DNA of 64,000 nucleotides, taken from the IMG/VR virus record IMGVR_UViG_3300028840_005860, positions 166,070 through 230,069 of that record. The stretch is one strand, 5' to 3'. Below the pieces are notes generated by a model. The model was not told where the DNA came from. It saw nothing but the letters and a program-made list of their open reading frames with translations, and did not search any database. Shown piece after piece: positions 12,428 to 61,436 of this stretch. Within the stretch, counting starts at the first letter, position 1, and each line of letters begins with the position of its first letter. Position numbers and translations under genes: made by a program.

Positions 12428-12736
12428 CTACGACCCGGTGCCCGTGTCGGTTTCTCCGGTTTCGGTACCGGAGCCGTCGGTGGGGGTCTCGGTCCCTTCC
12501 GTGTCGGAGCCGTCGGTGGGGGTCTCGGTCCCTCCCGTGTCGGAGCCGTCGGTGGGGGTCTCGGTCCCTTCCGTGTCGGAGCCGTCGGTGGGGGTCTCGG
12601 TCCCTTCCGTGCTGGAGGCATCGGCGGAGGTCCCGCTGTCGGTACCCGAACCGGTCCCGTCGGTGTCGTCATCGTCCGACCCACAGCATGGAACCACGCT
12701 AAGGATCACGGCAAGTACAGCGTGCTCGATCTTCAT
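12428..12736 (-). CDS. Small secreted/lipoprotein-like protein with Thr/Gly/Asp repeats
   Basis: Signal peptide MKIEHAVLAVILSVVPCC followed by TEGTETPTDGSD repeats. Confidence 0.7.
   Translation of the reverse strand: MKIEHAVLAVILSVVPCCGSDDDDTDGTGSGTDSGTSADASSTEGTETPTDGSDTEGTETPTDGSDTGGTETPTDGSDTEGTETPTDGSGTETGETDTGTGS
12469..12611. repeat. 36-bp tandem repeat, 4 copies
   Basis: Unit CGGAGCCGTCGGTGGGGGTCTCGGTCCCTTCCGTGT at 12469, 12505, 12541 and 12577; coding repeat. Confidence 0.95.
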
Positions 12737-12817
12737 GGCGTAGAAGGCAATCCAATAGGGGAATCAGCGGGTTCTTTGCACCATCTCCGAGTTTCACGTA
12801 GAAACAGAGGAGGCCAG

Positions 12818-36184: not shown

Positions 36185-39100
36185 ATGGCAGCGGAAGGCA
36201 GCAAGAACGCAATCGCGGGATCGGCGTCCCCGTCCTCACAGAGGAAGAACGAGGACGAGCGCGTCGTGGCGGACGTCCCGAACACCCGGCCCGAGCTGCA
36301 CATCGGCAAACCCACCCGCGTCGTCGTCGGATCTATGAGATCGAGGGGCGGCCCTACCAGCTTCCGCGCGAGGGTGGCGAGCTGCGGGCCGGGCACCGGC
36401 AGCTACGGCGGCGTCAGTGCCGGAGGCGGCGGCACCGGCTACGGAGGGTACGGAGGCTTCGGAGGGAACTTCGGAGCCGGAGCCGTCATGCAGGCGAGCT
36501 CCGGAAACTTCTACTCCCCCGAGCTGAGCACCGACTTCCTTGAGCTTCCCCAGTCGCTCAACGAGCAGTGGAACTACTACAGGTTCTTCTACGACAACGA
36601 ACCGTTCGTCGGGCAGGCGCTCGACCTGCACACCGAGCTGCCGCTGTCCAAGGTCCGGCTCGGGCGCCCGAAGGCCAACGACAGGCGGATGGCCGAGGCG
36701 TCTCTGCGGTTCTGCGAGAAGTGGGTGAAGCGCATCGGGCTGCTCCAGCGTCTGCTCGAGATCGTCCACGACTACTTCAAGATCGGAGAGGTCTACATCT
36801 TCTGCGAGGACGCCAACCCGGAGATCCCACAGGACGTCCGGAAGAAGGTCGTGAGGCGCGTCGAGGCGGACGGCACGCTGACGGAGACGTGGGTCGACCG
36901 CGAGGACGCGAACGAGCGCACCGTCAGGTGGATGAAGCAGCACTACAAGGGGTGGACCAGCATCAGGACCGTCCCGCCCGAGCAGATCCACCTCCAGACG
37001 TTCCCGTTCACCGACGAGGTGTTGATCGATCTGATCCCCGACTCGAAGAGCAGGCACCTGCTCGACATGGCCGACCAGGGCGACAAGTACGCCGCGCGCG
37101 TCGTCAAGTCCATGGATCCGGTCGTGGTGGAGGCCCTTCGCAGGGGAGAAAACGTCCCGCTCAGCACCGACCCGGACGGCGGCTCCTTCGTCCACTACAT
37201 GGCGAACAAGAAGTCGCAGTACGAGCCGAGGGGCCACAGCATCCTCCAGCGGTGCCTTCTTCCCGGCACGCTCATAACCGTCCAGCGCAACGGGATCGTG
37301 CGGCAGGTCCCCGTGGAGGACGTCGACACGACTACGGATCTCCTGTTGACCCACAAGGGTCGGTTCCGTCGGGCCACGGCAGGTTCTCGCCCGGTGCGCG
37401 AGAGGGTCGCGGTCCTGCGCATCGAAGGCGTCGAAGACCCCTTGGCCCTCACCACTGACCACGAGGTGCTCCTCGTGCGGGAAGACGGCACCGAGGCGTG
37501 GGTGCCCGCGGGCGAAGTGCGCGAGGGCGACATCGTGCGCGAGAGTCACGTTGTCCCGGAGAACGAGCCCGTCCCTGAGATCGACCTCGCGACGTGGTGG
37601 AGTAATCGGAGGCTCAACGTTGCGCGACGTTTCCGTGAAAACGCGAAGGAAGTCGAAATCCGCAACCGTGAGGTTCGCGTCATCGACGTCGAGGATGGTC
37701 CCGATGGGCTCACCGTCACCTTCGAGCACGACAACGACGACGCGGGTCAGATCGAGGCGACTGAGGGGATGCGTCGGTTCGTGGCATGGCTCAAGAACCT
37801 GGACGCGCCCACGGAGGCCACCTATGACGAGATCGCGGCCGTCACCGGAGTCGACAAGTCGAAACTCAGGAACTACGCGCACCTCCTCCGAAGGGAAGCG
37901 GATCTGCGCACCGAGAGTCGGAGCCTTGGACGGGGTCGAGGTCGTCGCACGACCTGGTGGCCCCTCTCTGGCGACGCGGTCGTCCCGCGAGAGACCCGCT
38001 GCGTCACGATGACGTCCCCCGTCGCCCGGATCGAGGTGGACGAGGGATTCTGTTACCTGCTCGGCACGTGGGTCGGAAACGGCAACATCTGGACCTCGGA
38101 CGAGTTGGTCCTCAATTCTCATTCCGTCGCTTGGACCGCGGGCACCGGCGACCTGGAGCAGGAAATCAAGGCAGAGGAGATGAGGCTCGCCAGTGCCTCC
38201 TTCGGCGACCAGTGCTCGGACGGCCACCTGTTTGGAGAGGAGTCCGGCTCCGACGCGTTCAGGATTGAGGATCCGCTCCTGGCGCGGTGGTTTATGGATG
38301 AGTTCGGGCACTCGGCCCAGAGCAAGCGGATCCCGAGGTGGCTCTTCGACCTCGACGAGGCTCGCGTGTTGGCGTTCCTGCGGGGACTGCTCGACACGGA
38401 CGGGAATCTCCAGGAGAGGACGACACAGACGACCATCAGGTTTGAGATGGATAACCGCGTCCTCCTCGACCAGGTGCATCTCCTCTGCAACAGGCTCGGG
38501 ATAAAGACCCAGGTCAGGAACTATGTGAAACCCGCGCGGTCGTGGACGCGGCGCTGGAAGACCAAGAGGGGTTGGAAAGAGAAGAGTTACCATTACGATG
38601 CCAAGGCGTACGCGACTCTCACGGCGACGCGCCACGCTGACGTGCGTCGTTGGGCCGAGGGGTCCGTCAAGGGATCGAAGGTCGAGTGGCAGGACAAGAC
38701 GCACCCGAACGCCCTGCGTACACAGTTCGTGAACGGATGGCTCACGCGGAGGGTCGAAGGCACCGGTTTGGTGCCATACGAAGGACTCGTGTTCTCGTTC
38801 GATGTCGAGGGAGACGAGTCTCACGTAACACATCAAATGGTGACCCATAACTGCTTGAGAACATTAGTATTTTTTGATAAGTTGAGACAGGCCCAGACCA
38901 GCATCGCCTCCCGGCACATGACGCCGATCCGGCTCGTCTACGCCGAGGACATGGACGAGGAGAACACCGAGGCCCTCCGCGACCAGATCGACCTCGCCCT
39001 CCAGGACCCGGACTACACCATCGTCACCAACTTCCAGGTGACGTGGGAGGAGATGAACTCGAACGGGCGCCTCCTCGAACTCTCGAGCGAGTACGACCTC

Positions 39101-39634
39101 ATCGCGCGGCAGCTCTACGCGGGGCTCGGCGTCACCGAGACCCTCCTGAACGGAGAGTCGAGCTACAGCGGCGACCGCATCAACCTCGAGGTCATCAACA
39201 CGCGCTACATGCTGCTCCGCGAGAACGTCCAGCGCCTCGTCGAGGAGTACTTCTTCAAGCCCATGTGTCGTCGGATGGGCTTCGTCGAGGAGGACGAGGA
39301 CGGCCAGCTCGAAGTGATCTACCCGCGCCTGAGCTTCACGCGGCTCGCCCTGCGCGACAACCAGGACACCTTCGACGCGCTGTTCAACCTCTACCAGAAG
39401 GGGAGCCTCGACATAGAGACGATCCTCGACCTGCTCAACATCGACCCGGTGGTCGTCCGTGAGAGGCTCGAGGCCGACTTCGGGACCTTCAACGACTCGC
39501 AGTTCAACGAGGTCCTGCGCTCCGCCTACGGGCGCGTCGGCGACCAGCTCGTCGAGGGGTCCGACATCGTTCAGAAGATCGCCGACGTCCTGGGCGTGGA
39601 CTACAAGAAGCCCGAGGAACCCGGACGGTTCTAG
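36185..39634 (+). CDS. Portal protein, intein-containing
   Basis: Downstream of TerL; about 616 aa after intein removal; RFFY..EPFVGQALD, G.SILQR and PIRLV portal-like segments. Confidence 0.8.
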   Translation: MAAEGSKNAIAGSASPSSQRKNEDERVVADVPNTRPELHIGKPTRVVVGSMRSRGGPTSFRARVASCGPGTGSYGGVSAGGGGTGYGGYGGFGGNFGAGAVMQASSGNFYSPELSTDFLELPQSLNEQWNYYRFFYDNEPFVGQALDLHTELPLSKVRLGRPKANDRRMAEASLRFCEKWVKRIGLLQRLLEIVHDYFKIGEVYIFCEDANPEIPQDVRKKVVRRVEADGTLTETWVDREDANERTVRWMKQHYKGWTSIRTVPPEQIHLQTFPFTDEVLIDLIPDSKSRHLLDMADQGDKYAARVVKSMDPVVVEALRRGENVPLSTDPDGGSFVHYMANKKSQYEPRGHSILQRCLLPGTLITVQRNGIVRQVPVEDVDTTTDLLLTHKGRFRRATAGSRPVRERVAVLRIEGVEDPLALTTDHEVLLVREDGTEAWVPAGEVREGDIVRESHVVPENEPVPEIDLATWWSNRRLNVARRFRENAKEVEIRNREVRVIDVEDGPDGLTVTFEHDNDDAGQIEATEGMRRFVAWLKNLDAPTEATYDEIAAVTGVDKSKLRNYAHLLRREADLRTESRSLGRGRGRRTTWWPLSGDAVVPRETRCVTMTSPVARIEVDEGFCYLLGTWVGNGNIWTSDELVLNSHSVAWTAGTGDLEQEIKAEEMRLASASFGDQCSDGHLFGEESGSDAFRIEDPLLARWFMDEFGHSAQSKRIPRWLFDLDEARVLAFLRGLLDTDGNLQERTTQTTIRFEMDNRVLLDQVHLLCNRLGIKTQVRNYVKPARSWTRRWKTKRGWKEKSYHYDAKAYATLTATRHADVRRWAEGSVKGSKVEWQDKTHPNALRTQFVNGWLTRRVEGTGLVPYEGLVFSFDVEGDESHVTHQMVTHNCLRTLVFFDKLRQAQTSIASRHMTPIRLVYAEDMDEENTEALRDQIDLALQDPDYTIVTNFQVTWEEMNSNGRLLELSSEYDLIARQLYAGLGVTETLLNGESSYSGDRINLEVINTRYMLLRENVQRLVEEYFFKPMCRRMGFVEEDEDGQLEVIYPRLSFTRLALRDNQDTFDALFNLYQKGSLDIETILDLLNIDPVVVRERLEADFGTFNDSQFNEVLRSAYGRVGDQLVEGSDIVQKIADVLGVDYKKPEEPGRF
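37253..38851 (+). mobile_element. Intein with LAGLIDADG endonuclease and extra HTH-like insertion (533 aa)
   Basis: R|CLLPGTLITV...LTTDHEV...LGTWVGNG...FLRGLLDTDG...MVTHN|C. Confidence 0.93.
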
Positions 39635-39675: not shown

Positions 39676-42240
39676 GTGCCCTCGCTCATCCCCGACAATT
39701 TCACGAAGGAGACGCCTCCCGAGCCGGTGCGTCAGCTCGCGGAGGCGTGGCTTCGCGCGAGGCTTCGGGGTGCCGAGCCCGACTTCCTCGACGTGGCGGA
39801 CGGGGCGGTGATCGGCGTCTACCGGCTGCCCTGCGGCCTCGTCAGGCGGGCGAGCCACAGCTTCTCGCGGTGCATGGCGAAGGGCTGCCAGAAGCCGCCC
39901 GAGGTGGAGTGCCTCTGGGCCGAGGGTCGCGGCCGTGCCTGGCACTGTCAGAAGCACCACGACGCCTGGGTGAAGGAGGACGGTCCGGACGGGCGCGACA
40001 TCATCAAGCAGCAGAAGATTCCCGACGGCGTCGTGGGCGAGAAGTACGGCGAGTATCCGGCGAAGAAGACGGCCGGGGACGGCGACGAGTTCAAGAAGGG
40101 CGACAGGATCGTCTACGGCCCGCTCGTGCCGCCCGGCCCCAGGTACCTGCCGGGGATCGTCGTGAAACCGCAGGCCCCCTCGAGCCTCGACAACCCCGTG
40201 ACGATCAGGGTGAAGGGAGAGGGCACGTTCGAGACCGACCCCGACAGCGTGACTCCGCTGTCCCGGTGGAAGCGAAACCCGGATCTCGGCAAGACGGCCA
40301 AGGCGACAGGCAAGAAGACCGGCGTCGGCGAGCACGTCGGGCTGTTCATCCCGCTTCCGAAGGATCTAGCCAAGAAGTTCCCGTCGCTCGGCGAGGACGA
40401 CCCGTCCCCGTCCCACGTGACCTTCCTCTACATCGGCGACTGCAAGGGCAAGCGCGACCAGAAGGTCCTGGTCGACACGCTCCGGGACGCCTGTCGGCGC
40501 TGGTGGCCCGGCGCCAAGGCCACGCTCGGGGGCCTCGAGTACTTCACCCACGAAGACAAGGATCGTCGCGTCCCCCACGTCTCCGTGGACTTCGACAAGG
40601 ACCTGTCGGGTTTCAAGCACCGCATCAGGCAGGAGCTCGAGGAGAACGGCGTCGAAGTCGAGGACAGCTGGCCCGACTTCAAACCCCACGTGACGCTCGG
40701 ATACCTACCGGGTACGGACTCCGAGTGGAAGGGCAAGGTTCCGAAGGGTTCCTGGAGTTTCGACGAGATGGAGGTCTGGGGTCTCCCGAAGGTCCACAAG
40801 CTCAAGCTCGGTCCCTCCATCTACAAGATCTCCGACACGTGGCTCCGCGGGAGGTTGCACCGCTACGTTGCCGCGCGCTACCTCGTTCGCAAGATCGCCG
40901 GATGGTGGGCCATCAGGCCGGGCAGTCCGGGAATCAACTGCCCGCCCGTGGACAAGGGCGGCCTCATGAATGCCATCCCCGGCACGGACCCGCCGGACGC
41001 CCGCTACAACGGGGACGGCCCGGCCGACATCATGGACGCCGCGCTCGCGGACGTCGACATGGAGTACCTGATGGAGTGGGGGCGCCCCGCGACCAAGCAG
41101 GAGCTCCAGGCGGTGTTCGACTTCTGCACTGGGGCCCTCCGCGAGGACGGTTCGAGGGACTACGGCAAGCACGAGCACGTGAATCAGTGGTTCGTCGAGT
41201 TCGCGGAATGGCTTGGCAAGAGGCCGAATGAGATCCGGTTCTTTCAGGGCGACAGCGACATCGTGGACGCCCTCCGGCAGAACTGGGACGGTACGGGCGA
41301 GTCCCTGGACGCCTACAAGAAGGAGATCCTGGACCTCGTCGACAAGACCAAGAAGTTCGAGGGCGGTCTCGAGGCCAAGGACCTGGCAGAGCGTCTGAAG
41401 GCCAGAACCCAGGTGATCCACGACGAGACCTTCCGGGGCGAGGACTGCCTGGAGGGGGGAGAAGATCCCGAGATCGTCATAAAGCGGGTAGCATCGAGGT
41501 ACATGGCCTCGATCCCGCACGGCAAGAACGTCGCCCTGATGAAGTGGCTCTCGGACGTGACCAGGCGCCTGGGCGTCGCCCGGGACACCTACGTCGTCGG
41601 GGGTGCGGTCAGGAACTTCCTCATCGGTCGGCCCATCAAGGATCTCGACGTGGTGATCGACTCGGTTCGGGCCGGACGCGACTCCGCGTGGCTGGCGGCT
41701 CAGATCTCCCGGCACGTGCCCGCTCCGACGAACGTCACGACGAACCAGTACGGCGTCGCCATCCTGACGATCAAGGGGAGCTGGGTCCTCGACGGCGAGG
41801 ACATGCGAGGCGAGGTGATCGAGATCGCCAACGCCCGCAAGGAGAGCTACGCGGAGGGACTCGGGAAGGGGCACAAACCCCATACGGTTGCCCCGGCCAC
41901 CATCGAGGAGGACGTCAGGCGTCGAGACTTTACGATGAACGCGCTTCTCTGGCGTCTGATGGACCTGGCGCACGGGCCCGAGAAGGCCGAGGTGATCGAC
42001 CTCACCGGCTGCGGCCGGCGCGACCTTGAGCAGGGGGTCCTGCGGTGCCCGCAGCCGCCCGACAAGGTGTTCTCTGACGATCCGACGAGGATGCTGCGTC
42101 TTGTTCGACTCGCCTCCAAGTACAATCTGAAAATCCCACCTGATGTGGCTGCCTCAGTACGCCGGAATGCAAGCAAACTGAAGAGAATGCCTTGGGAGGC
42201 GGTCGCGACGATCCTCATGCAGACACTGGAGGGCAGGTAA
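39676..42240 (+). CDS. Multidomain protein: Zn-finger-like, SH3-like, 2H phosphoesterase, and N-terminal part of a CCA-adding-type nucleotidyltransferase
   Basis: Two HxT motifs (SHVTF, PHVTL); YVVGGAVRN...KDLDVV, ARKESY, EEDVRRRDFTMNA, FSDDPTRMLR. Confidence 0.88.
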   Translation: MPSLIPDNFTKETPPEPVRQLAEAWLRARLRGAEPDFLDVADGAVIGVYRLPCGLVRRASHSFSRCMAKGCQKPPEVECLWAEGRGRAWHCQKHHDAWVKEDGPDGRDIIKQQKIPDGVVGEKYGEYPAKKTAGDGDEFKKGDRIVYGPLVPPGPRYLPGIVVKPQAPSSLDNPVTIRVKGEGTFETDPDSVTPLSRWKRNPDLGKTAKATGKKTGVGEHVGLFIPLPKDLAKKFPSLGEDDPSPSHVTFLYIGDCKGKRDQKVLVDTLRDACRRWWPGAKATLGGLEYFTHEDKDRRVPHVSVDFDKDLSGFKHRIRQELEENGVEVEDSWPDFKPHVTLGYLPGTDSEWKGKVPKGSWSFDEMEVWGLPKVHKLKLGPSIYKISDTWLRGRLHRYVAARYLVRKIAGWWAIRPGSPGINCPPVDKGGLMNAIPGTDPPDARYNGDGPADIMDAALADVDMEYLMEWGRPATKQELQAVFDFCTGALREDGSRDYGKHEHVNQWFVEFAEWLGKRPNEIRFFQGDSDIVDALRQNWDGTGESLDAYKKEILDLVDKTKKFEGGLEAKDLAERLKARTQVIHDETFRGEDCLEGGEDPEIVIKRVASRYMASIPHGKNVALMKWLSDVTRRLGVARDTYVVGGAVRNFLIGRPIKDLDVVIDSVRAGRDSAWLAAQISRHVPAPTNVTTNQYGVAILTIKGSWVLDGEDMRGEVIEIANARKESYAEGLGKGHKPHTVAPATIEEDVRRRDFTMNALLWRLMDLAHGPEKAEVIDLTGCGRRDLEQGVLRCPQPPDKVFSDDPTRMLRLVRLASKYNLKIPPDVAASVRRNASKLKRMPWEAVATILMQTLEGR

Positions 42241-42242
42241 TC

Positions 42243-43070
42243 GTGGCCGGAAGACCTTGGACGGAAGGAGAGGAGAGGCTTCTTCGCCACTTATGGAAGT
42301 CCGACCTCACGCGGGAGGAGGTCGCGGCACGGTTGCTAGGACGAACGCCGGTCGCCATACAGGTGAGGGCAAAGCGTCTTGGTCTTCGCCATACGGATGA
42401 GCAGTTCCGCCGGATCCTTTCGAAGAAAAGCAAGGGGGAGAACAATGGGATGTTCGGACGTGAGGGGCCGCGCAGAGGTGTAGTGCTCACTGTTACCCAG
42501 CGAGATCTTCTCAGAAAGAAGGCGCTCAACTCCTACAAGAATGGGCGACCCAAGATGGTCGGTGCTCGAAACCCGATGTTTGGTAAGCCGGGCACGATGC
42601 GCGGCAAGAAGTTGCCACCGTCGGCCAAGGCCACCCTCTCCGAGAAAGCCAAAGTCCGTTGGTGTCAGGCATCGGACGAGGAAAAGGCCAAGAAAGTCGC
42701 TCAGCTTCGTGAGGGTCGCGAGCGTCTCGGACGTGACAGCCCCTCATCGATCGAGGTGGCGATGAGGGAATGGTTGTCAGACTTGCAAACTGACTTTGAA
42801 GCACAGGTCGTGATTGGGTTCTACACCGTCGATTTCCTTGTATCGGAGAACAAGGTCATCGAGTGTCACGGCGACTATTGGCACGCGCACCCTGAGAAGT
42901 ACGCGAGCGGCGACCTTGATGAGACGCAACGGCATAATGTTCACCGAGACCGCCGCAAGGCCACTTTTCTCCGAAATCGGGGTTATGGGCTGCTTGTGAT
43001 GTGGGAGAGTGACATCAAGGAGCGTCCTTCGTGGTGCGTCTCGCAAGTGGAGGATTTTCTTCATGGGTGA
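42243..43070 (+). mobile_element. Free-standing homing endonuclease (HTH + NUMOD3 + Vsr/DUF559-like nuclease)
   Basis: WTEGEE..L...GRT..AI..RA..LGL; GENNGMFG and GARNPMFG; SSIE...YTVDF...IECHGDYWH; lower GC; own RBS. Confidence 0.85.
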
Positions 43071-43503
43071 TCCCAGGAAGGCTCTTCAGCAGATGAAGCA
43101 GCTCGGGCTGCTCGAGGTGGTCTCCGAGATGATCAGGTCGAGCAAGCCCTTCTCCGCCTACATGGCGAACCAGCTGCGGACGAACAGGAGGGTCCCCCTC
43201 CTCCTCGACCTCATGGACATGGGGGTCCCCGCGACCACGCCCCTCTCGTTCCTCGACCGCGCGGGACAGCAGCGCGTCCGCGAGGTCACGATGCCGATGA
43301 CAGAGCGCGAGGCCGCGGACTTCGTGAACCTCCTGATCAAGCCGCCCGTGGACAACAGGCGGATCATCGAGGAGCTCGGGCTCCCAGGTCCCGAGCGGCG
43401 CCTCATCCTGCCGATGGCGCGCGACCTGATCCTCAAGAACCCCCCTCTCGCGGCCGACGGGCGCAGGCTGACCGAGGAGGTCCTCCGAGCATGGCCGCGC
43501 TAG
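43063..43503 (+). CDS. C-terminal part of the split CCA-adding enzyme
   Basis: MGDPRKALQQMKQLGLLE matches the helix that follows motif E in class II CCA enzymes; VDNRRIIEELGLPGPE tail motif; GGAGG RBS inside the endonuclease gene. Confidence 0.75.
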   Translation: MGDPRKALQQMKQLGLLEVVSEMIRSSKPFSAYMANQLRTNRRVPLLLDLMDMGVPATTPLSFLDRAGQQRVREVTMPMTEREAADFVNLLIKPPVDNRRIIEELGLPGPERRLILPMARDLILKNPPLAADGRRLTEEVLRAWPR

Positions 43504-46500
43504 CACAGCTGGCCCTCCGCGTCGCCGCGAGGCACCTCGCAGCCGACGCCTACTTCGAGGTCGGCGAGGAGGTGCTGTACGGCAAGTTCAAGAACCGTCG
43601 CGGTCGGGTCGTCAGGATCTTCGACGACGAGCGCGGCGTCCCCTCCGTGGAGATTGAGCCGATCCCGAAGGGCCGCAGGCAGAACAGGATGGTGGGCCTC
43701 TACGGGATCTGGAAGCTGCCCGAGGCGCGGAAGACCGCAGCGATGGACCGCGAGGCCTGCATCATCGCGGGCCGCAAGTTCGGGGACGGCCTGTGCCTCA
43801 TGAAGACCCGCGACCGGGCCTACGATCCGAAGCTCCAGGTGCTCCACGTCGAGCGGGACGGCACCGAGATGGCCGTGGTGTTCGACAAGACCACGGGCTA
43901 CCTGGAGGGCGTCAACGAGCACGGCATCGGCATCGTCAACACGACGCTCATGGTCGTCCGGGACGAGCAGGAGGGCGTCAAGAAGACCAAGGGCGACAAG
44001 CAGAAGGGGCCCAAGAGGTCCAAGGACGGTCCCAAGATCTTCAAGGCGCTCGAGGCCGAGACCCTCGACGACGCCATCCGCTCCCTCGTCTCCTTCCGCG
44101 GCGGCATCAAGGGTCACACGTTCGTGGCGGACGGCGAGCGCATGGTCTGCATCGAGCGCAGCGGCAGGCATCCGGCCAAGATCCACCGCCTCGACCCGAC
44201 GCGCGTGAACACGCGCACCAACCACGGAGTCGCCTACCCCGACGCCGGCTACACCCACGGGGACGACTACGTGTCGTCCATCGTGCGGCGCTGGGAGGCC
44301 CAGAAGCGCCTCCAGAACGTGAACAATCCCGAGGTCGTGGCCCCGGCCCTGGTCCAGGCGATCCACGAGGCCGACAGCCCGTTCAACCCGGTCCGCTGCA
44401 CCGACAAGATGCGGACCACGAGCCAGCTCACCATCGACACGACGAACCCGACGCTCTACCTGTACGTCATCCCCGGGCACGCCGACCTCTCCCCCCCGCG
44501 CAACGTCCTCCCCGACGGCCGACGCCCCAAGATCCCCGTGCGGACCTTCCGCTACCGGCAGAGGATGGAGGACCGCACGGAGCAGCCGGGCCGGAAGACC
44601 GCGCGGGAGGTGCTCGCGCGCTACAAGTCGAAGAAGAAGGTCAGGTCCGAGGACGGCGACGAGACGACCGTCTACGAGTACTCCGAGCGCCAGGTCCAGC
44701 ACCGCAACCGCGAGAAGGCCGAGCGCATCGAGAGGCTCCGTGGATCGATAGGCAAACTCCGCGCGCAGCTCGAGAAGGACATCAGATCCGACGACCCCAA
44801 GAAGCGCGACGTCGCGGCCGCCGTGGGCCTCATGGATCACACGTACGAGCGTCCCGGCAACGACGAGTCGGCGTCCGACGGCCACTATGGCGTGACCAAC
44901 TGGAAGGTGCGGCACGTCAGGTTCGGCGACGGCCAGGCCAAGATCAGCTACGTCGGCAAGTCGGGCGTCAGGCAGCAGAAGTCCGTCACGGACCGAGACC
45001 TCGTGAAGGCGCTCAGGGCCGCCTGCGCCGACAAGGGCGCCGAAGCGACCTGCCTGGACGTGAGCGCCGACGAGGTCAACGAGTACCTCAGGCCCTTCGG
45101 CGTCACGGCGAAGGACCTGCGAGGGCTGCACGCCAACGGGGAGATGAAGGACCGGCTCAGGCGCGTGCGCCGGGAGGGCGGCCCGCTGCCCGAGGACCCG
45201 GAGAAGCGCGAGGAGAAGCTCAGGAAGGAGTTCGACAGGGCCCTGGACGAGGCCGCGGAGACGGTGGGCCACGAGCCTTCGACCCTCAAGAGCCAGTACC
45301 TCGTGCCCGGCCTGGAGGAAGACTACAAGAGGGACGGCACCGTGAGCGAGAGCCACGCCAAGAAGGCGGCCGAGGCCGTGACCGACACGGCGTCCTTCTA
45401 CGTGATCGCGCCCGAGGCGCTCAGGGGCATGCTCGACGACACCGACTGGCTCGAGCTCGCTCACGACCTATGGCCTGGAGAAGGGCGCCCGGGCGGCGAC
45501 GCCGAGGTGCTCGTGCCCGAGATGGAACGCCAGGTCCGCGAGAGCGGTGGCGCCGTGCTCGACACCGGATGGGACGGCGGCTTCGACGTCGGCGTGAGGG
45601 GCAAGTACGACGAGCTGGGCCGGATCGAGCCCTTCGACCTGCCCGTTCGCGAGAAGGGCGCGGTGCCTCCCTACGGGTTGCGCAAGAGCGCGTCGCTGCT
45701 GCGCGTCGCCGCCGAGGAGGGGACCTCGGCCGAGCGCAGGATCCTCGCCAACGCCCTGGTGGCCCCCGTGCTCGTGGCCCGGACGCGCGAGTGGTGGCTC
45801 CGCGAGGCGCCCCACCTGTACCGGATTGCTCGCGATCACGAGAAGCCTCGACCTCGCATCGAGGGCCTCGAGTTTCCGTCCAATCTTTTCACGATCCTAT
45901 GGTACGAAGACGCGGACGGGAACGACCTGGGAGACGGGGACCTTGAAGGAGAGCCGGGCGCGCCAGAAGGAGCACAGTACCAGCACAGCCAGTTCCCGCA
46001 CGTCCTGCACCACAACGTCCTGCGCCTCAACGACGACGGAACCTCCACGGACCTCGGCGGCGGCGAGGCGTCCTACCCGGAAGACCTCGTGAACGCGATG
46101 GTTCGCAGCGGGGACTGGGACGTGGGCGACGCGATCATGGTCGCCGCCCAGTCGTGCGAGCGGTGCCTGAACGTCCTGTGCCACCATTACGACCTGGACG
46201 ACGGCTACCCGTTCGGGTCCGAGGAGTACTGGAGCGCTGGCACCCGTTGTCCGATGTGCGAGAACGTGCATGCTCCCGCTCGCACGGCCGCGACGCCGAA
46301 CTACGAGGCGTACGTCGAGCGCAAGAGGCGGGAGGGAGAACCCCCGCTCGACCGCGAGCGGTGGGAGCGCAGGGTCCTGGGCGTGCGCGACGAAGAGGGT
46401 CCGCGCGACTGGGACGCGCACCGCAGAGACGTGATGCGGCGTCACGAGCTGGACAAGCTGCACGCGCCCTACGATCCCGAGAACAAGCACCTGCGCATCG

Positions 46501-49500
46501 ACCTGATCAGCGTCCGAAGGGACGCGCGCGGAGAGGGTCACGCCCGACGGGCGATGGAGGAGATCCTCGGATGGGCGGACCGGGCCGGAGCGACCGTCAC
46601 GCTGACGCCGACCTCCGAGTTCGGCGCGTCCAAGAAGCGCCTGACGCGGTGGTACGAGGGCATGGGGTTCGTCCCGAACAAGGGCAGGAACAAGGATTTT
46701 CGGTTTCAGGACGCGATGATCCGCGCCCCCCAAGTCAAGACCGCCACGAAGTCCGACGCCGAGCTCGACGAAGAGGCGGTCGAGGAGATGCTCCGCGAGG
46801 AGCCCAAGAAGAAGCCGCCTCGCTACGATCTGCGGGACAACCGACCCTTGGAGGACGACGACGAGGAGGACCTCGAGGGCCTCGGCGGCGGGGACCGGGG
46901 CGACCGGGACCTGAGCCTCAAGTGGAACAAGGTCGGCAGGCGCGTGGCGTTTCGCTGGCTGGCGACTCCCGGAAGGCTCTCGGCGGTCAGGACCGCCATG
47001 CGTCATCGGGCGAAGGTCACGCCCGACTCCGAGTTCCAGAAGGAGATCGCGGACAAGAAGTTCAGGCACCCGGAGACGGGCAACGAGGTCGCGTTCGGCT
47101 CCCTGCCGACCGAGGAACAGCACCGGATTTTCGAGGAGTGGAAGAAGAAGCACGCGCCGAAGGGGGAACCGGCCGAGGGCAAAGAGAAACCCAAGGAGGA
47201 GCCCGAGGGTCGGTCGCCCGAGGAGATCGACCAGGACATCTCCGAGGCCCGCGAGGCGGCCAAGAAGTTGAAGGGCGAGATCCGCGACCTGAAGGAGAAG
47301 ATTGGCGACGCGAAGAAGGCCATCGAGGACTGGACCGAGCTCACGAAGGGAGAGGTCGGCGAGGAGATGAGGAAGAAGGGCGACGCCGTCATCAAGGAGA
47401 TGAAGCGCATCGTCCTGGATGCCGAGGACGACATCGAGTACAAGACCCAGGACCTCAAGGACGCGCGCAGACGCGTCCAGGAGCTGAAGGAGGAGCGCGA
47501 GGACCCGACCGGAGCTAAGGCGAAGAAGGAGCAGGAGGAGAGGGAGCAGAAGGAGAAGCGGACGCGGCAGGCCGTCAAGGACACGGTCGCGGCGATGGAG
47601 AAGATGCTCGGCAGGGGGTCGAGGCTGCCGCAGGGGACGAGGCAGGAGATCGAGAGTGCGCTGGGCGACTTCGACTACCCCCAGCTCGAGGCGTTCGCGC
47701 TGGCGTTTCAGGGCGAGCTCAAGGACCTCAGCGGACAGGACCCGACGTCGCCCGACGTGATCTCCATGGCGAACCGGCAGGCGAAGATCGGCTTCGACGT
47801 GGAGGGTGTCACGGATCCCGAGGAGCTGGCGAGGCGTGCCGCGGAGGTCGGCTACGTGACGAACGTGGTCGCCAACCCGATGGTCGTGGGAGGCAGGCCC
47901 GTCGGGCAGACGGAGATGGACGACGCGGCACGGTCGGCGCGGGCGAGGGAGGCGTTCGCCCAGTTCGAGAATCTCCACCCGAAGCTGCAGCGCATGGCGG
48001 CGGAGCGCATCCGCGAGGAGCTAAGGGGCCTCGACGAGGACACCGACCGCGCCGTGGAGCTCGAGTCGATCCTCAGCGCCGTCGACCTGGCGCACGTGGG
48101 CCAGACCGGAGAGGCCCTCCCCGGACGCCCGCAGCCGAGCGCCGGCAACGCCGCGCTGATCAAGCGCATGATCGCGGACGGCAACGCCGACAGGATGTTC
48201 CAGACGAAGAAGGACTTCTTCTCGGAGGGATCGCGGGAGGCGATGGCGCAGGCGCTCGAGGAGATGGACGACGCCGACGTGGCCAATTTCATCACGGGCG
48301 ACGACCCGAGCCACCCGTTCTACGAGCTCTCCCAGAGCATGAGGACCGAGGGCGCGGGCGAGTTCAACCAGATGATCAAGGACTTCCTGATCAAGGACTT
48401 CCTGAACGACACGTGGGGCGACCGGGCCGCGCGCGACGTGATGGAGGCCGCGGGCGTCGAGGACTGGGACAGCCCGGAGGCGCGGGCCGAGCTGCTCGAG
48501 GAGTCCAAGCGAGCCGGCGAGACGCCCCTGGGTCAGGTGCTGGAGGCGAAGGAGCGTGTCGAGGCGGCGCGGGCCGCGGGCGAGGAACCCAGCCAGGACG
48601 ACCTGGACCTCGTGAGTTCGTACTTCGAGCCCGAGGCCGGCGAGGGGGTCGTCGGCAATGCCAGGGCCCTCCTCGGCCTCCTGAGGGACAAGTTCAAGAA
48701 GCACGTGATCTCGCCCGCCGTGGCCGTGCTCAACCACTTCGTGAAGACGCGGGATCCGAAGGTACTCAGCCAGGAGACGTTGCCGCACCCGGACGAGAGA
48801 TCCCCTGAGCCGAGACCCAAGGAGGAGCGCGAGAAGGCGCGGGTCGAGATGCCCACCGAGGCAGAGGCGCCCGAGAGCAAGCCTGGTAAGCCCGAGGTCG
48901 TGGCTCCCGAGTGGGCCGCGGAAGGACGCAAACCGGCCGAGGACCTGACCCCTGAGAAGGCGATGCGCAGGCGCATCGTCCTGAAGAGCGAGCGCCAGAA
49001 GCTAGAGGCCCAGCGAGAGAAGGCGCCGCCCGAGGAGCGCGGCAAGTACGACGTCAAGATCAGGAAGCTGGACAAGGAACTCGAGAGAGCCAGCGTTCCG
49101 AAGAGACCGGAGAAGAAGGCCCCTGAGCCGGAGAAGAAGGCCCCTGAGCCGGAGAAGGTGAAGGAGCCTGAGGTGGTGCGGAAGCGTCGCAAGCAGCTCG
49201 AGAAGGTGAAGTCCGTGCGCGACGAGGCCAGGGCGGCGCTGAAGGAGATGGAGCCCGCGGCCCGGAAACAGCTCGAACAGAAGCTCGAGAAGATGGACGC
49301 CGCCATCAGGCAGGTCGAGGAGCAGCACGCCGAGGACGAGAAGCACGGCCCCGGGGACGTCTGGAAGACCAAGGGAGGAAACTGGCGCGCCAAGAACGAG
49401 GAGGGTCTCTCCAGGAGTTTCAAGAAGAGGGACGAGGCCGAGACGTACGCGAGAGGGGAGCCCGAAAAGGAGTGGAGCGCCGAGTTCAAGGCAGTCTCGC

Positions 49501-49625
49501 CCGAGGAGGCCTGGCGCGGGCCGACGCGCTTCGCGGGGAACGTGACCGACGCGTGGCTCGCCCGCATCCGAAGCATCCATCCCGACGATCCCGACCGCCC
49601 CGTCATCGTGCTCGACGCGGCCTGA
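43491..49625 (+). CDS. 2044-aa polyprotein-like head protein: SH3-like, Ntn hydrolase, DNA topoisomerase IB, GNAT, coiled-coil domains
   Basis: CIIAG...KTRD...EGVNEHG...RTNHG (Ntn); ERPGN, VGKSG, KDLRG, VGHEP..LKSQY (Topo IB R-K-R-H-Y); ISVRRDARGEGHARRAM...WYEGMGF (GNAT). Confidence 0.85.
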   Translation: MAALAQLALRVAARHLAADAYFEVGEEVLYGKFKNRRGRVVRIFDDERGVPSVEIEPIPKGRRQNRMVGLYGIWKLPEARKTAAMDREACIIAGRKFGDGLCLMKTRDRAYDPKLQVLHVERDGTEMAVVFDKTTGYLEGVNEHGIGIVNTTLMVVRDEQEGVKKTKGDKQKGPKRSKDGPKIFKALEAETLDDAIRSLVSFRGGIKGHTFVADGERMVCIERSGRHPAKIHRLDPTRVNTRTNHGVAYPDAGYTHGDDYVSSIVRRWEAQKRLQNVNNPEVVAPALVQAIHEADSPFNPVRCTDKMRTTSQLTIDTTNPTLYLYVIPGHADLSPPRNVLPDGRRPKIPVRTFRYRQRMEDRTEQPGRKTAREVLARYKSKKKVRSEDGDETTVYEYSERQVQHRNREKAERIERLRGSIGKLRAQLEKDIRSDDPKKRDVAAAVGLMDHTYERPGNDESASDGHYGVTNWKVRHVRFGDGQAKISYVGKSGVRQQKSVTDRDLVKALRAACADKGAEATCLDVSADEVNEYLRPFGVTAKDLRGLHANGEMKDRLRRVRREGGPLPEDPEKREEKLRKEFDRALDEAAETVGHEPSTLKSQYLVPGLEEDYKRDGTVSESHAKKAAEAVTDTASFYVIAPEALRGMLDDTDWLELAHDLWPGEGRPGGDAEVLVPEMERQVRESGGAVLDTGWDGGFDVGVRGKYDELGRIEPFDLPVREKGAVPPYGLRKSASLLRVAAEEGTSAERRILANALVAPVLVARTREWWLREAPHLYRIARDHEKPRPRIEGLEFPSNLFTILWYEDADGNDLGDGDLEGEPGAPEGAQYQHSQFPHVLHHNVLRLNDDGTSTDLGGGEASYPEDLVNAMVRSGDWDVGDAIMVAAQSCERCLNVLCHHYDLDDGYPFGSEEYWSAGTRCPMCENVHAPARTAATPNYEAYVERKRREGEPPLDRERWERRVLGVRDEEGPRDWDAHRRDVMRRHELDKLHAPYDPENKHLRIDLISVRRDARGEGHARRAMEEILGWADRAGATVTLTPTSEFGASKKRLTRWYEGMGFVPNKGRNKDFRFQDAMIRAPQVKTATKSDAELDEEAVEEMLREEPKKKPPRYDLRDNRPLEDDDEEDLEGLGGGDRGDRDLSLKWNKVGRRVAFRWLATPGRLSAVRTAMRHRAKVTPDSEFQKEIADKKFRHPETGNEVAFGSLPTEEQHRIFEEWKKKHAPKGEPAEGKEKPKEEPEGRSPEEIDQDISEAREAAKKLKGEIRDLKEKIGDAKKAIEDWTELTKGEVGEEMRKKGDAVIKEMKRIVLDAEDDIEYKTQDLKDARRRVQELKEEREDPTGAKAKKEQEEREQKEKRTRQAVKDTVAAMEKMLGRGSRLPQGTRQEIESALGDFDYPQLEAFALAFQGELKDLSGQDPTSPDVISMANRQAKIGFDVEGVTDPEELARRAAEVGYVTNVVANPMVVGGRPVGQTEMDDAARSARAREAFAQFENLHPKLQRMAAERIREELRGLDEDTDRAVELESILSAVDLAHVGQTGEALPGRPQPSAGNAALIKRMIADGNADRMFQTKKDFFSEGSREAMAQALEEMDDADVANFITGDDPSHPFYELSQSMRTEGAGEFNQMIKDFLIKDFLNDTWGDRAARDVMEAAGVEDWDSPEARAELLEESKRAGETPLGQVLEAKERVEAARAAGEEPSQDDLDLVSSYFEPEAGEGVVGNARALLGLLRDKFKKHVISPAVAVLNHFVKTRDPKVLSQETLPHPDERSPEPRPKEEREKARVEMPTEAEAPESKPGKPEVVAPEWAAEGRKPAEDLTPEKAMRRRIVLKSERQKLEAQREKAPPEERGKYDVKIRKLDKELERASVPKRPEKKAPEPEKKAPEPEKVKEPEVVRKRRKQLEKVKSVRDEARAALKEMEPAARKQLEQKLEKMDAAIRQVEEQHAEDEKHGPGDVWKTKGGNWRAKNEEGLSRSFKKRDEAETYARGEPEKEWSAEFKAVSPEEAWRGPTRFAGNVTDAWLARIRSIHPDDPDRPVIVLDAA

Positions 49626-61200: not shown

Positions 61201-61436
61201 ATCGGCGCTACTGTGAGGCTTGTCAGGCGAAGACGTCGGGACGGACGGGCAAGAGGAGGACAATCCAACGCAAACTCGATCCCGACAGGCTCGCCGTTCT
61301 CGCGGCTGCGGGCGTGCCTATCAAGAAGATGGCTGAGGTGTTGGGGGTAGGTGCTTCGACGCTCGATCGGTATCTCCGCAAGCACGGCATCGAGCACCCA
61401 CGGACGGGGGGCAACCCGAAGCACCGAGGCGCCTGA
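58293..61436 (+). CDS. Fusion: HTH + LAGLIDADG endonuclease + amino-DNA methyltransferase + zinc ribbons + HTH
   Basis: WGMMLGDG and LALWFMDDG; NFRP, WDPCAGWGGR (motif I), FTSPPYF (motif IV); many CxxC pairs; C-terminal IKKMAEVLGVGASTL. Confidence 0.85.
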   Translation: MTDAADPRRSGRTRRREQRPTRPDMESPFWTRAVGLGLPEEERDGYVALFESQQGKKKRHGLVTGLGLSLEAWQTLAHEFTDLEMGRALGLLSAAVTVFRKRRGINTLTARQRREKAQGGRRRSLDDLTKAQLESLIAEMPLKAVAALYGVAPPAIRARCRRWDIYVPSKSERAVSDKTLTEEQKQAVWGMMLGDGHLTETGYFRLAHGYEQYEYLMHCRKLLACIARSVTYDESVKDNGTLYHEFSFRTDNHPWLRMQRPLWYPNGSRTKRPLPEVIDRLSPFGLALWFMDDGHRGDVASFAVGDVPFDLAEEVARRTAARFGIETYIKPHSRHTTCKSLAIRGASLDRFFSLIRDYVPNNLLHKLPASYWKEGTRAEGRVDETDGRLFPRSVAARSRDYETLDDQEREILVDEVVEYWRREGFPFHEPRVRDLRTLVNVTGRQALKGDLLRAWQVGQSSCLAFQPHYWETPVHGREGETPLERFGRDDDLRREILRLLTKGRVPNGARLRSALAGSHNSVSNFRPSSAKVLVERFCPTGGTVWDPCAGWGGRLLGATMASCMPRYVACEPQPLTLQGLRALVDWLGRFVPGAEERVELHAAPAEDFEPPSGLDLVFTSPPYFKKEVYGHEDTQSWVRYPSYREWIEGFLAPVMVRARDRLRPGGWLVLNVADVTIEGNRYPLVADARRVAEELGLGEPEILRYELPSLLGDDREEPVLCWSKSREATHHLGGPGLQLVMCEKCGRVTDHRVLRAGICPSCDAKVVRCQYPGCGKDLPGAIATRRYCDDCARRIDAERARDRRRVLRERVPVRVIRKFTCTCGVEFEVPTDGGRPRACPSCTSARKAEEAEAEIRRRTKTCAYRHCDRAFVDHSPRNSAKFCHEEHRRREKAFRTGRVTSVKDFRKSDPVLDERPSSAIHTCKGCGNPFELPKGSQRTRCSDCEAEARKKVCKTEGCETEFHDESERNNRRYCEACQAKTSGRTGKRRTIQRKLDPDRLAVLAAAGVPIKKMAEVLGVGASTLDRYLRKHGIEHPRTGGNPKHRGA

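What the first reader, a model, noticed from the sequence alone, without database searches (positions are those of the whole stretch)
42100..43503. CCA-adding enzyme gene split in two by an intron-less homing endonuclease
Seen: the CCA domain stops after the motif-E region (LKRMPWEAVATIL...TAA 42240). An endonuclease ORF begins 2 nt later, and its end overlaps a new RBS+ATG (43063) whose product continues the CCA fold (ALQQMKQLGLL). There is no flanking space for a group I/II intron core and no intein motifs. Codons just upstream (about 42100-42190) are atypically AT-ending, like a co-conversion tract. Known precedent: mobE splitting nrdA in phage Aeh1, where two polypeptides assemble into an active enzyme. 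Inference: a naturally split heterodimeric CCA enzyme.
Basis: partly seen in the sequence, partly recalled or inferred. Interest (0 to 1): 0.7.

Follow-up and report, generated by a model that had tools for sequence, protein, structure and literature searches.

The report
Homing endonuclease splits phage CCA-enzyme gene
In an uncultivated jumbo phage, a selfish Vsr-like (EDxHD) homing endonuclease gene has cut the tRNA CCA-adding enzyme gene into two separately translated pieces with no intron or intein; the same cut recurs in at least ten related phages, and it is a well-documented new example of a known kind of event.

Summary
The upstream ORF (39676-42240) ends with TAA at 42238-42240. A 275-aa endonuclease ORF starts at GTG 42243 and stops at 43068-43070. 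A 146-aa ORF starts at ATG 43063, inside the endonuclease's last codons.

In more than 100 uninterrupted relatives the two host pieces are adjacent parts of one class II CCA-adding domain. The linker has the same length (9 residues), so nothing is left for an intein. Rfam finds no intron, and the endonuclease is out of frame with the host gene.

The endonuclease belongs to the EDxHD/Vsr-like family. It has a GcrA-like helix-turn-helix, two NUMOD3-like repeats and a Vsr-like nuclease domain. Homologues (40-56% identity) sit at the same codon position in at least ten diverged phage contigs, scattered through the host-gene tree. One lineage lost the endonuclease but stayed split.

The last ~50 codons before the insertion have the endonuclease's low GC3 and group with other occupied alleles, which fits a co-conversion tract.

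Assembly of the two pieces into an active enzyme is inferred only. It rests on a complex model (0.79 against a best control of 0.03), undiminished conservation of the C piece, and ribosome-binding sites supplied by the cassette.

Verdict: new member of a known kind, of moderate interest.

The parts
39676..42240 (+). N piece: 854-aa fusion protein. 2H/LigT-like phosphoesterase at about aa 244-349; CCA-enzyme head and neck at about aa 612-854 with motifs A, B and D. The start codon is uncertain: GTG 39676 has an upstream GGAGG, but homologue P0009 begins at the position of Met67.
41509..42237 (+). CCA-adding catalytic part of the N piece (aa 612-854). PolyA_pol head domain, then the DDPTRMLR motif and three helices that contact the C piece in the complex model.
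42097..42192 (+). Low-GC3 tract (15 of 32 codons G/C-ending). Inferred to be a co-conversion tract or recoded flank that travels with the endonuclease cassette.
42228..42233 (+). Shine-Dalgarno-like GGAGGG for the endonuclease, encoded by the N piece's codons L-E-G.
   Evidence: the E-G or D-G tail is shared by most occupied alleles
42238..43065 (+). Minimal inserted segment (828 nt): the N piece's stop codon, 2 nt, and the endonuclease ORF up to and including the ATG of the C piece.
   Evidence: Junction comparison with uninterrupted alleles: 9-residue linker in both forms
42243..43070 (+). Free-standing homing endonuclease gene, 275 aa, EDxHD/Vsr-like family.
42252..42386 (+). Endonuclease aa 4-48: GcrA-like/SANT-like helix-turn-helix DNA-binding domain.
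   Evidence: 5yiu E 2e-4; 5yiv target TM-score 0.92
42426..42605 (+). Endonuclease aa 62-121: two NUMOD3-like repeats (G..NGMFG.. and G..NP.FGKP..).
   Evidence: (NUMOD3 E 0.026, below the cut-off)
42735..43067 (+). Endonuclease aa 165-275: Vsr-like nuclease domain with invariant E171, D197, E207, H214 and D236.
43049..43054 (+). Shine-Dalgarno-like GGAGGA for the C piece, encoded by the endonuclease's conserved C-terminal E-[ED]-F-L motif.
43063..43503 (+). C piece: 146 aa, the remaining helical part (neck end, body and tail, the tRNA-binding part) of the CCA enzyme.

Best explanation
[quoted passage not shown] The insertion point is a surface loop between two helices, after the catalytic head and neck motifs.

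The cassette carries what is needed to keep both halves translated:
- a ribosome-binding site and stop codon at the end of the upstream half;
- its own ORF, 2 nt later and in a different frame;
- a second ribosome-binding site written into its last codons;
- an ATG that overlaps its stop codon.

All three ORFs are therefore probably read from one transcript by translational coupling (inferred). The catalytic N piece and the tRNA-binding C piece then associate non-covalently through a helical interface to rebuild the enzyme (inferred).

The endonuclease spreads by cutting uninterrupted alleles in co-infecting relatives. It is copied in by recombinational repair, dragging about 150 nt of upstream flank with it. 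That would explain the low-GC3 flank, which resembles other occupied alleles. The asymmetry suggests that the cut or recognition site lies upstream of the insertion point (inferred).

Shown: the anatomy, the homology of both halves, the absence of an intron or intein, the endonuclease family, the recurrence at one site in many lineages, and the mosaic flank. Inferred: expression, assembly, enzyme activity and endonuclease activity.
For: **Anatomy and collinearity**
- Anatomy.
- Collinearity with uninterrupted homologues. In one search, 111 of the 119 other best homologues carry the C-piece region in the same protein, nearly all directly after the N part and a few with an intein or other insert between; six end at the split point or 1 residue from it, and P0097 and P0114 gave no full match.
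- The linker is 9 residues in both forms.

**No intron or intein**
- No Rfam match.
- No Hint or intein domain.

**Endonuclease family**
- An endonuclease profile hits Vsr 1cw0 (E 1.5e-9), the I-Bth0305I nuclease domain 3r3p (E 7.4e-9) and the GcrA DNA-binding domain (E 2e-4).
- D197 and H214 align with the two catalytic residues that were mutated in the 3r3p crystal construct (PMC3239194).
- The fold search gives the same top hits.

**Recurrence and mobility**
- The same endonuclease sits at the same site in L003, L004, L005, L006, L009, L029/L037, L035 (partial), L036 and L038.
- On the catalytic-core tree the split state needs 5-6 changes, and monophyly of the split alleles is rejected (p-AU 0.0005).
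- In the flank tree the window joins two other split alleles.
- In 8 of 9 occupied alleles the flank GC3 is below the host core and near the endonuclease's value. This is true of none of 4 uninterrupted alleles.

**Signs that the split enzyme is kept in use**
- The split allele without the endonuclease (L001 = L002 = L023) keeps the endonuclease's first three codons and its stop/ATG overlap.
- C-piece conservation is not relaxed in split alleles, and rough dN/dS values are 0.14-0.45.
- This is the only PolyA_pol gene in the 230-kb genome.
- Complex model: score 0.79 against a best control of 0.03. That mark was reached by 51 of 78 solved complexes and 2 of 108 mismatched pairs. The runs agree in at least 95% of contacts and the partner's pLDDT is at least 82.
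- Three independent runs carry the arrangement.
Against: - No transcript, protein or activity data exist, and no RNA run was listed.
- The complex model may only be re-creating a known single-chain fold from memory, so it shows compatibility, not binding.
- dS is saturated, so the dN/dS values are rough.
- No near-identical occupied/empty allele pair was found. The co-conversion tract is therefore inferred from composition and a 47-column tree, and the AU test on the three-allele group is only marginal (p 0.0375, with the group chosen after seeing the flank tree).
- The phage might manage with the host's CCA enzyme, so selection on the phage copy could be weak.
- No hairpin or promoter signal supports any particular mode of regulation.
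Confidence: 0.8

Rival explanations
1. The gene was already two adjacent genes, and the endonuclease later settled in the intergenic gap, as free-standing T4-type endonucleases usually do. The spacer-only allele (L001) would then be the ancestral state.
For: L001/L002/L023 show a split gene with only a 51-nt spacer and no endonuclease. Free-standing endonucleases often sit between genes (established knowledge of T4 seg and mob genes).
Against: - In one search, 111 of the 119 other best homologues, including the window's nearest relatives, carry both parts in one protein.
- Split alleles are scattered among uninterrupted ones on the core tree.
- The L001 spacer begins with the endonuclease's start (GTG GCG GGC = M-A-G, 2 nt after the stop) and ends with the same stop/ATG overlap. 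It therefore looks like a deletion remnant.
- The N tail of occupied alleles encodes the endonuclease's ribosome-binding site.
Confidence: 0.06
2. The insertion simply inactivated the CCA domain. The two ORFs are decaying remnants and the phage relies on the host enzyme.
For: No expression or activity evidence exists. Many phages lack a CCA enzyme altogether (general knowledge).
Against: - Both halves are intact in at least ten diverged occupied alleles and in the allele that lost the endonuclease.
- The C piece is as conserved, relative to the catalytic core, as in uninterrupted genes: mean residual +0.013, and +0.058 for the window.
- Rough dN/dS values are below 0.5.
- Ribosome-binding sites and start codons are kept.
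- It is the only copy in the genome.
Confidence: 0.1
3. The halves are rejoined by a splicing-type process: an unrecognised intron, a cryptic or very small split intein, or ribosomal bypass.
For: Inteins are abundant in this genome and even in relatives of this gene. In the window and in L001 the N and C frames are the same.
Against: - No Rfam family matches at E up to 1.
- Only 2 nt lie between the N stop and the endonuclease start, and the endonuclease and C ORFs overlap, so no room is left for an intron core.
- The linker has the same 9 residues as in uninterrupted genes, so no intein residues are present.
- The endonuclease is out of frame, and in other occupied alleles the N and C frames differ.
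Confidence: 0.03
4. Assembly chimera or sequencing artefact.
For: The record is a metagenome-assembled virus contig. The unitigs break at 41818-41851.
Against: Contigs from three runs of three samples span 41822-43775 or beyond with no differences. The same architecture occurs in many independent contigs from other samples.
Confidence: 0.01

Closest known systems
Aeromonas phage Aeh1 nrdA split by the free-standing endonuclease gene mobE (Crona et al. 2011, PMC3045599)
   Same: [quoted passage not shown] The two polypeptides have to assemble non-covalently.
   Different: mobE is an HNH-type enzyme; this one is Vsr-like/EDxHD. In Aeh1, new tail sequences created by the insertion are essential for assembly. 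Here the linker length is unchanged and only the last few N-piece residues differ, because they encode the endonuclease's ribosome-binding site. The target is a CCA-adding enzyme, not ribonucleotide reductase. Activity of the split enzyme was shown for Aeh1 and has not been shown here.
Intein-less SbcD-like gene fractured by a Vsr-like endonuclease in ocean metagenomes (Dassa et al. 2009, PMC2677866)
   Same: [quoted passage not shown]
   Different: That case was a single locus with extra residues at both broken ends. Here there are at least ten occupied alleles, more than 100 empty alleles and a remnant allele, with no added residues. The target gene also differs.
'Fractured genes' proper: a split intein plus a free-standing endonuclease (Dassa et al. 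2009)
   Same: Gene halves stay in place and in orientation with an endonuclease gene between them. The Vsr-like endonuclease family is shared.
   Different: No split-intein halves are present (tested, not met). Any restoration must therefore come from subunit association, not protein trans-splicing.
I-Bth0305I, prototype of the EDxHD family (Taylor et al. 2011, PMC3239194; PDB 3r3p)
   Same: Similar size (266 against 275 aa). Both have an N-terminal DNA-binding region with NUMOD-type repeats and a C-terminal Vsr-like nuclease, and the catalytic Asp and His align.
   Different: I-Bth0305I is encoded inside a group I intron in recA. This gene is free-standing in a coding sequence, and it has an additional GcrA-like helix-turn-helix at its N terminus.
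Bacterial CC-adding and A-adding enzyme pairs (for example Aquifex aeolicus; from established knowledge)
   Same: CCA synthesis depends on two polypeptides of the class II family.
   Different: Those are two complete paralogous enzymes with divided tasks. Here one enzyme is cut into a catalytic piece and a tRNA-binding piece.

Membership tests
EDxHD / Vsr-like homing endonucleases | C-terminal nuclease domain with the Vsr fold | tested here: met
   Profile against PDB: 1cw0 E 1.5e-9, 3r3p E 7.4e-9. In the fold search the top four hits are Vsr and I-Bth0305I, with target TM-score 0.71-0.75 for 3r3p.
EDxHD / Vsr-like homing endonucleases | Composite catalytic residues: a Glu, the metal-binding Asp, an acidic residue at the Vsr Phe62 position, the His general base and a neighbouring Asp | tested here: met
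   E171, D197, E207, H214 and D236 are invariant in 8 homologues. D197 and H214 align with the D196A and H213A positions of the 3r3p construct, and E207 aligns with Vsr F62.
EDxHD / Vsr-like homing endonucleases | Separate N-terminal DNA-binding region with NUMOD-type motifs | tested here: inconclusive
   Pfam NUMOD3 E 0.026, below the cut-off. Two conserved glycine-rich repeats appear in the alignment. A GcrA-like helix-turn-helix is clearly present.
EDxHD / Vsr-like homing endonucleases | Presence/absence polymorphism at one fixed site of a conserved host gene (homing signature) | tested here: met
   At least ten occupied alleles at the same codon position, among more than 100 empty ones. 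The state needs 5-6 changes on the host-gene tree.
EDxHD / Vsr-like homing endonucleases | Site-specific double-strand cleavage of the empty allele | not testable with these tools
   Needs purified protein and DNA substrates.
Gene split by a free-standing endonuclease without splicing (Aeh1 nrdA/mobE type) | Two collinear halves on one strand, with an independently translated endonuclease ORF between them | tested here: met
Gene split by a free-standing endonuclease without splicing (Aeh1 nrdA/mobE type) | No intron and no intein | tested here: met
   No Rfam match, a 2-nt gap and overlapping ORFs, unchanged linker length and a different frame, and no Hint domain. A spliced RNA could not be looked for, since no RNA run was listed.
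Gene split by a free-standing endonuclease without splicing (Aeh1 nrdA/mobE type) | The halves assemble into an active enzyme | not testable with these tools
   Only a model: score 0.79 against a best control of 0.03, 74 contacts, N residues 806-854 with C residues 1-50. Conservation is not relaxed.
Fractured genes with split inteins (Dassa et al. 2009) | Split-intein halves at the broken ends | tested here: not met
   The N tail plus the C head total 9 residues, as in uninterrupted genes. No intein domains are found.
Intron-encoded homing endonuclease (group I or II) | A self-splicing RNA core around the ORF | tested here: not met
   No Rfam match at E up to 1 in 41000-44500. There is no non-coding space.
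Class II CCA-adding enzyme / tRNA nucleotidyltransferase | PolyA_pol head domain with motifs A (GGxVR, DxD), B (RRD) and D (DDxxR) | tested here: met
   PF01743 E 1.3e-18; phrog_2244 E 8e-33. The motifs are readable in the translation.
Class II CCA-adding enzyme / tRNA nucleotidyltransferase | Helical neck, body and tail following the head, as in solved enzymes | tested here: met
   A model of the uninterrupted homologue (pLDDT 90.5) aligns over about 400 columns with 5hc9, 3h38, 6qy6, 1miv and 4wc2 at E about 1e-13. The C piece corresponds to model residues 264-408.
Class II CCA-adding enzyme / tRNA nucleotidyltransferase | Adds CCA, rather than only A, only CC, or poly(A) | not testable with these tools
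   Specificity cannot be read reliably from sequence.

The most novel reading that the evidence does not exclude
The split has been put to use. After the endonuclease forced the cut, the catalytic piece (fused to a 2H phosphoesterase) and the detachable tRNA-binding piece work as a two-subunit RNA-repair enzyme. Its substrate choice or activity would be set by the separate C subunit, which could explain why one lineage kept the split after losing the endonuclease, and why in relatives the C piece is fused to quite different downstream domains.
Probability: 0.1. Interest if true: 0.7.

Novelty: new member of a known kind. Interest (0 to 1): 0.5.

Why it matters
This is a natural test of whether a class II CCA-adding enzyme tolerates a cut between its catalytic part and its tRNA-binding part, which bears on how these template-free polymerases hold and measure tRNA.

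The family also supplies an unusually complete natural series for studying intron-less homing: many empty alleles, at least ten occupied ones and a remnant allele. That series can address how a selfish gene limits its cost by bringing its own translation signals, how much flanking sequence it drags along, and what remains when it is lost.

It also adds a new host gene and a new domain combination (a GcrA-like helix-turn-helix) to the little-studied EDxHD endonuclease family, which has been considered as a source of long-target DNA cutters.

Tried and rejected
- **No close isolate.** Megablast of the region against deposited phage genomes gave nothing. Protein-level searches found only distant relatives, at most about 36% identity for the CCA part and about 31% for the endonuclease, so no cultured phage has this arrangement.
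- **Bacillus phage G.** It looked as if its CCA match spanned two genes, but the gene is uninterrupted.
- **Regulatory hairpin.** A hairpin over the endonuclease start, as reported for fractured genes, was not better than shuffled sequence (z -0.19).
- **Promoter or terminator.** No sigma-70-like promoter or convincing terminator was found in 41800-43700.
- **RNA evidence.** No RNA run was listed. The DNA runs are contigs, so rare empty alleles in the same samples cannot be excluded.
- **Recent donor.** Nucleotide-level identity of the flank to other occupied alleles is only about 0.70-0.75, so no recent donor was identified.
- **dN/dS.** dS is saturated, so the estimates are rough.
- **Literature.** Full-text searches found no report of a CCA-adding enzyme gene split by a homing endonuclease. 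The Vibrio phage phi-pp2 paper mentions both items, but unconnected.


Full report
**1. What is in the sequence**

The window is the last 64 kb of a 230,069-bp virus record, judged about 90% complete. Its genes include ribonucleotide reductase, a RecD2-like helicase, a UvsX-like recombinase, a sliding clamp, a primase and a portal protein. These mark it as a tailed jumbo phage, and several of these genes carry inteins or LAGLIDADG inserts.

At the flagged place three same-strand ORFs follow each other without free space:
- ORF 39676-42240 encodes 854 aa.
- ORF 42243-43070 encodes 275 aa. It starts with GTG 2 nt after the TAA, in a different frame.
- ORF 43063-43503 encodes 146 aa. Its ATG lies inside the last codons of the middle ORF.

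GGAGGG at 42228-42233 and GGAGGA at 43049-43054 are placed as ribosome-binding sites for the second and third ORFs.

G+C drops from about 0.67 to about 0.56 between about 42100 and 43100. Contigs from three independent metagenome runs (two sediment, one seawater) cross both junctions with no differences, so the arrangement is real.

**2. The two host pieces are one CCA-adding enzyme domain**

The N ORF is a fusion protein. It has a 2H/LigT-like phosphoesterase and, at aa 638-790, the PolyA_pol head domain (PF01743, E 1.3e-18). It matches the phage tRNA nucleotidyltransferase family phrog_2244 only over profile positions 4-176 of 392, so the match is truncated. The 146-aa ORF has no family hit of its own.

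A database search with the N tail returned 577 relatives. Among the other 119 of the best 120:
- 111 carry the C-ORF sequence in the same protein, nearly all directly after the N part; in a few an intein or other insert lies between.
- Six end at the split point or 1 residue from it: P0003 (the window's own protein), P0006, P0021, P0050, P0084 and P0087.
- P0097 gave no C match and P0114 only a partial one.

For example, in P0009 (1038 aa) the N piece aligns up to residue 887 and the C piece aligns from residue 897, at 61% identity and E 1e-52. An exhaustive search with the C piece found 183 proteins, nearly all with the match just after a PolyA_pol head inside larger multi-domain proteins.

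A model of an uninterrupted homologue's domain (P0005:300-707, pLDDT 90.5) aligns over its full length with solved class II CCA-adding and A-adding enzymes: 5hc9, 3h38, 6qy6, 1miv and 4wc2, at E about 1e-13.

The cut maps to the loop between helices 249-261 and 266-275 of that model. This lies after motifs A to D/E of the catalytic head and neck. By the published description of these enzymes, the head and neck hold the catalytic core and the body and tail bind tRNA (PMC8563995).

**3. No intron, no intein**

- Rfam finds nothing at E up to 1 across 41000-44500.
- There is no non-coding room for an intron core.
- Uninterrupted genes read ...ILV-NDVMSQ-PTA-RKSL... The window reads ...ILM-QTLEGR-stop and Met-GDP-RKAL... 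Both forms have nine linker residues, so no intein residues are present.
- The middle ORF is out of frame with the host pieces.
- In other occupied alleles the N and C frames differ from each other.

**4. The middle ORF is an EDxHD/Vsr-like homing endonuclease**

Pfam gives DUF559 and, below its cut-off, the related nuclease family REase_MTES_1575 at the C terminus, GcrA at the N terminus, and a sub-threshold NUMOD3.

A profile of eight homologues hits E. coli Vsr (1cw0, E 1.5e-9), the nuclease domain of I-Bth0305I (3r3p, E 7.4e-9) and the GcrA DNA-binding domain (E 2e-4). A structure model gives the same top hits.

E171, D197, E207, H214 and D236 are invariant. D197 and H214 align with the two catalytic residues that were mutated in the 3r3p crystal construct. 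E207 sits at the Vsr Phe62 position, where this family has a conserved acidic residue. Size and layout match the family prototype, apart from the extra N-terminal helix-turn-helix.

**5. It is mobile and recurrent**

Homologues of this endonuclease (40-56% identity) lie at the same codon position of the same gene in L003, L004, L005, L006, L009, L029 (= L037), L036 and L038, and partly in L035. The host catalytic cores of these alleles are only 60-65% identical to the window's.

On a tree of the catalytic core (N residues 612-795):
- The window's nearest relatives are uninterrupted genes (78% identity).
- The split state needs six changes, of which at least five are forced by well-supported branches.
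- Holding the eight split alleles together costs 205 log-likelihood units (p-AU 0.0005).

The pattern fits repeated homing, or loss by recombination with empty alleles.

**6. A flank that travels with the endonuclease**

In the window, 17 of 32 codons at 42097-42192 end in A/T, against about 9% elsewhere (P about 4e-10). This is the GC3 minimum of the gene. In this genome such tracts occur mostly in genes with mobile inserts and in none of the ordinary replication and repair genes checked (RNR, UvsX, Sbc, clamp).

The effect is general. GC3 values by region:

| Allele | N core | Last 50 N codons | Endonuclease | C piece |
|---|---|---|---|---|
| window | 0.89 | 0.64 | 0.66 | 0.96 |
| L009 | 0.71 | 0.50 | 0.53 | 0.74 |
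| L036 | 0.65 | 0.34 | 0.44 | 0.54 |

- In 8 of 9 occupied alleles the last 50 codons of the N piece have a GC3 close to the endonuclease's and below the host core.
- In all four uninterrupted alleles with DNA in hand the flank is as GC-rich as the core, or richer.

At the protein level the window's flank is 75% identical to those of two other split alleles but only 56% identical to its nearest core relatives. In a flank tree the window joins those two alleles (support 90). The split label then needs four changes, fewer than in any of 500 shuffles. The core data reject that three-allele grouping only marginally (p 0.0375, and the group was named after the fact).

Downstream, GC3 returns to host level within about ten codons. 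The tract is therefore one-sided. I take this as co-conversion from a cut or recognition site upstream of the insertion point. This is inference: no near-identical donor was found.

**7. How the cost is limited**

The last N-piece residues of most occupied alleles end in E-G-x or D-G-x, whose codons (GAGGG or similar) form the endonuclease's ribosome-binding site. The endonuclease's conserved C-terminal E-[ED]-F-L is written with GAGGA or GGAG 8-9 nt before the C piece's start codon, and its stop overlaps that start. The cassette thus brings the signals that keep both halves translated. Dassa et al. noted the same for control elements carried by such endonuclease genes. No promoter or terminator lies inside the region, which is consistent with one transcript and coupled translation (inferred).

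**8. Do the halves work?**

This is inferred, from five lines of evidence:
- The gene is the only PolyA_pol gene of the genome.
- Both halves are intact in every occupied allele found.
- Relative to divergence of the catalytic core, the C piece of split alleles is as conserved as the same region of uninterrupted genes. The mean residual is +0.013 and the window's is +0.058, against a per-sequence spread of 0.04. Rough dN/dS values are 0.14-0.45, with saturated dS.
- One lineage (L001 = L002 = L023, from three samples) has lost the endonuclease but is still split. An 18-codon remnant ORF begins with the endonuclease's GTG-GCG-GGC 2 nt after the N stop and ends with the same stop/ATG overlap, and both host ORFs are intact.
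- A complex model places the C piece's residues 1-50 against N residues 806-854 with 74 contacts. The score is 0.79 against a best control of 0.03. That mark was reached by 51 of 78 solved complexes and 2 of 108 mismatched pairs. The runs agree in at least 95% of contacts and the partner's pLDDT is at least 82. Because single-chain CCA enzymes have been solved, this pass may come from memory: it shows the fit of the pieces, not binding.

**9. Comparison with what is known**

Genes split by free-standing endonucleases without any splicing are known:
- nrdA of phage Aeh1 with mobE, where the halves assemble and the enzyme is active (PMC3045599).
- A DNA polymerase gene of Aeromonas phage 25.
- A single SbcD-like metagenomic locus with a Vsr-like endonuclease and no intein (PMC2677866).

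The present case belongs to this kind. It is not a 'fractured gene' in the strict sense, because split inteins are absent.

What is new:
- the host gene: searches of the held literature found no report of a CCA-adding enzyme split this way;
- the GcrA-like domain on the endonuclease;
- the completeness of the natural series (empty, occupied and remnant alleles);
- the clear one-sided flank signature.

No cultured phage carries anything close.

**10. Verdict**

It is a new member of a known kind, of moderate interest. The anatomy and the evolutionary reading are well supported. Assembly and activity of the two-piece enzyme, and activity of the endonuclease, remain to be shown.

Noticed in passing
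window 3282-6932, 36185-39634, 52063-54843, 58293-61436: The window is crowded with other selfish inserts. A RecD2-like helicase carries a LAGLIDADG intein, a portal-like ORF has a LAGLIDADG_3 insert, one ORF has Hint plus LAGLIDADG signatures, and another has a LAGLIDADG_2 domain. Low-GC3 tracts coincide with several of them.
   Followed up: partly
P0014, P0037, P0085; L031:3387-4672: In some relatives the same CCA gene is hit by a different element: a LAGLIDADG intein inserted in the head domain just after motif B, at about N-piece residue 757.
   Followed up: partly
L001:6936-6992 (= L002, L023): In the endonuclease-less split allele the N and C ORFs are in the same frame and separated by a single TAG. 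Read-through of that stop would give a fused protein with a 17-residue insert.
   Followed up: no
L009:2779-3828: This endonuclease homologue is 350 aa long because its N-terminal W-T-x-E-E helix-turn-helix module is duplicated.
   Followed up: no
L010:2989-4489: A 32%-identical relative of the endonuclease lies immediately upstream of a distant (28% identity) CCA-like gene in a low-GC phage contig, next to the gene rather than inside it.
   Followed up: no
window 41818-41851: In all three metagenome runs the unitigs break here, and a 34-base unitig has about 1.7 or more times the depth of its neighbours. This hints at a co-occurring related allele that shares this stretch.
   Followed up: no
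L003, L006, L037, L038 downstream ORFs: In relatives the C piece is the N terminus of much longer proteins (441, 397, 321 and 935 aa; the 935-aa one has an InPase domain). In uninterrupted relatives the CCA domain sits inside proteins of up to about 3400 aa. The endonuclease therefore also cuts 'polyvalent' multi-domain proteins.
   Followed up: partly
window 43491-49625: A 2044-aa ORF with a eukaryote-type topoisomerase IB core and a weak GNAT match starts 13 nt before the end of the C piece. A topoisomerase IB gene follows the CCA gene in most related contigs too.
   Followed up: no
window 7666-7746 (- strand); 12722-15064: A tRNA-Ser(GCT) gene and an RlaP-type RNA-repair nucleotidyltransferase lie in the same window. 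Together with the 2H phosphoesterase fused to the CCA domain, this suggests a tRNA/RNA-repair toolkit.
   Followed up: no
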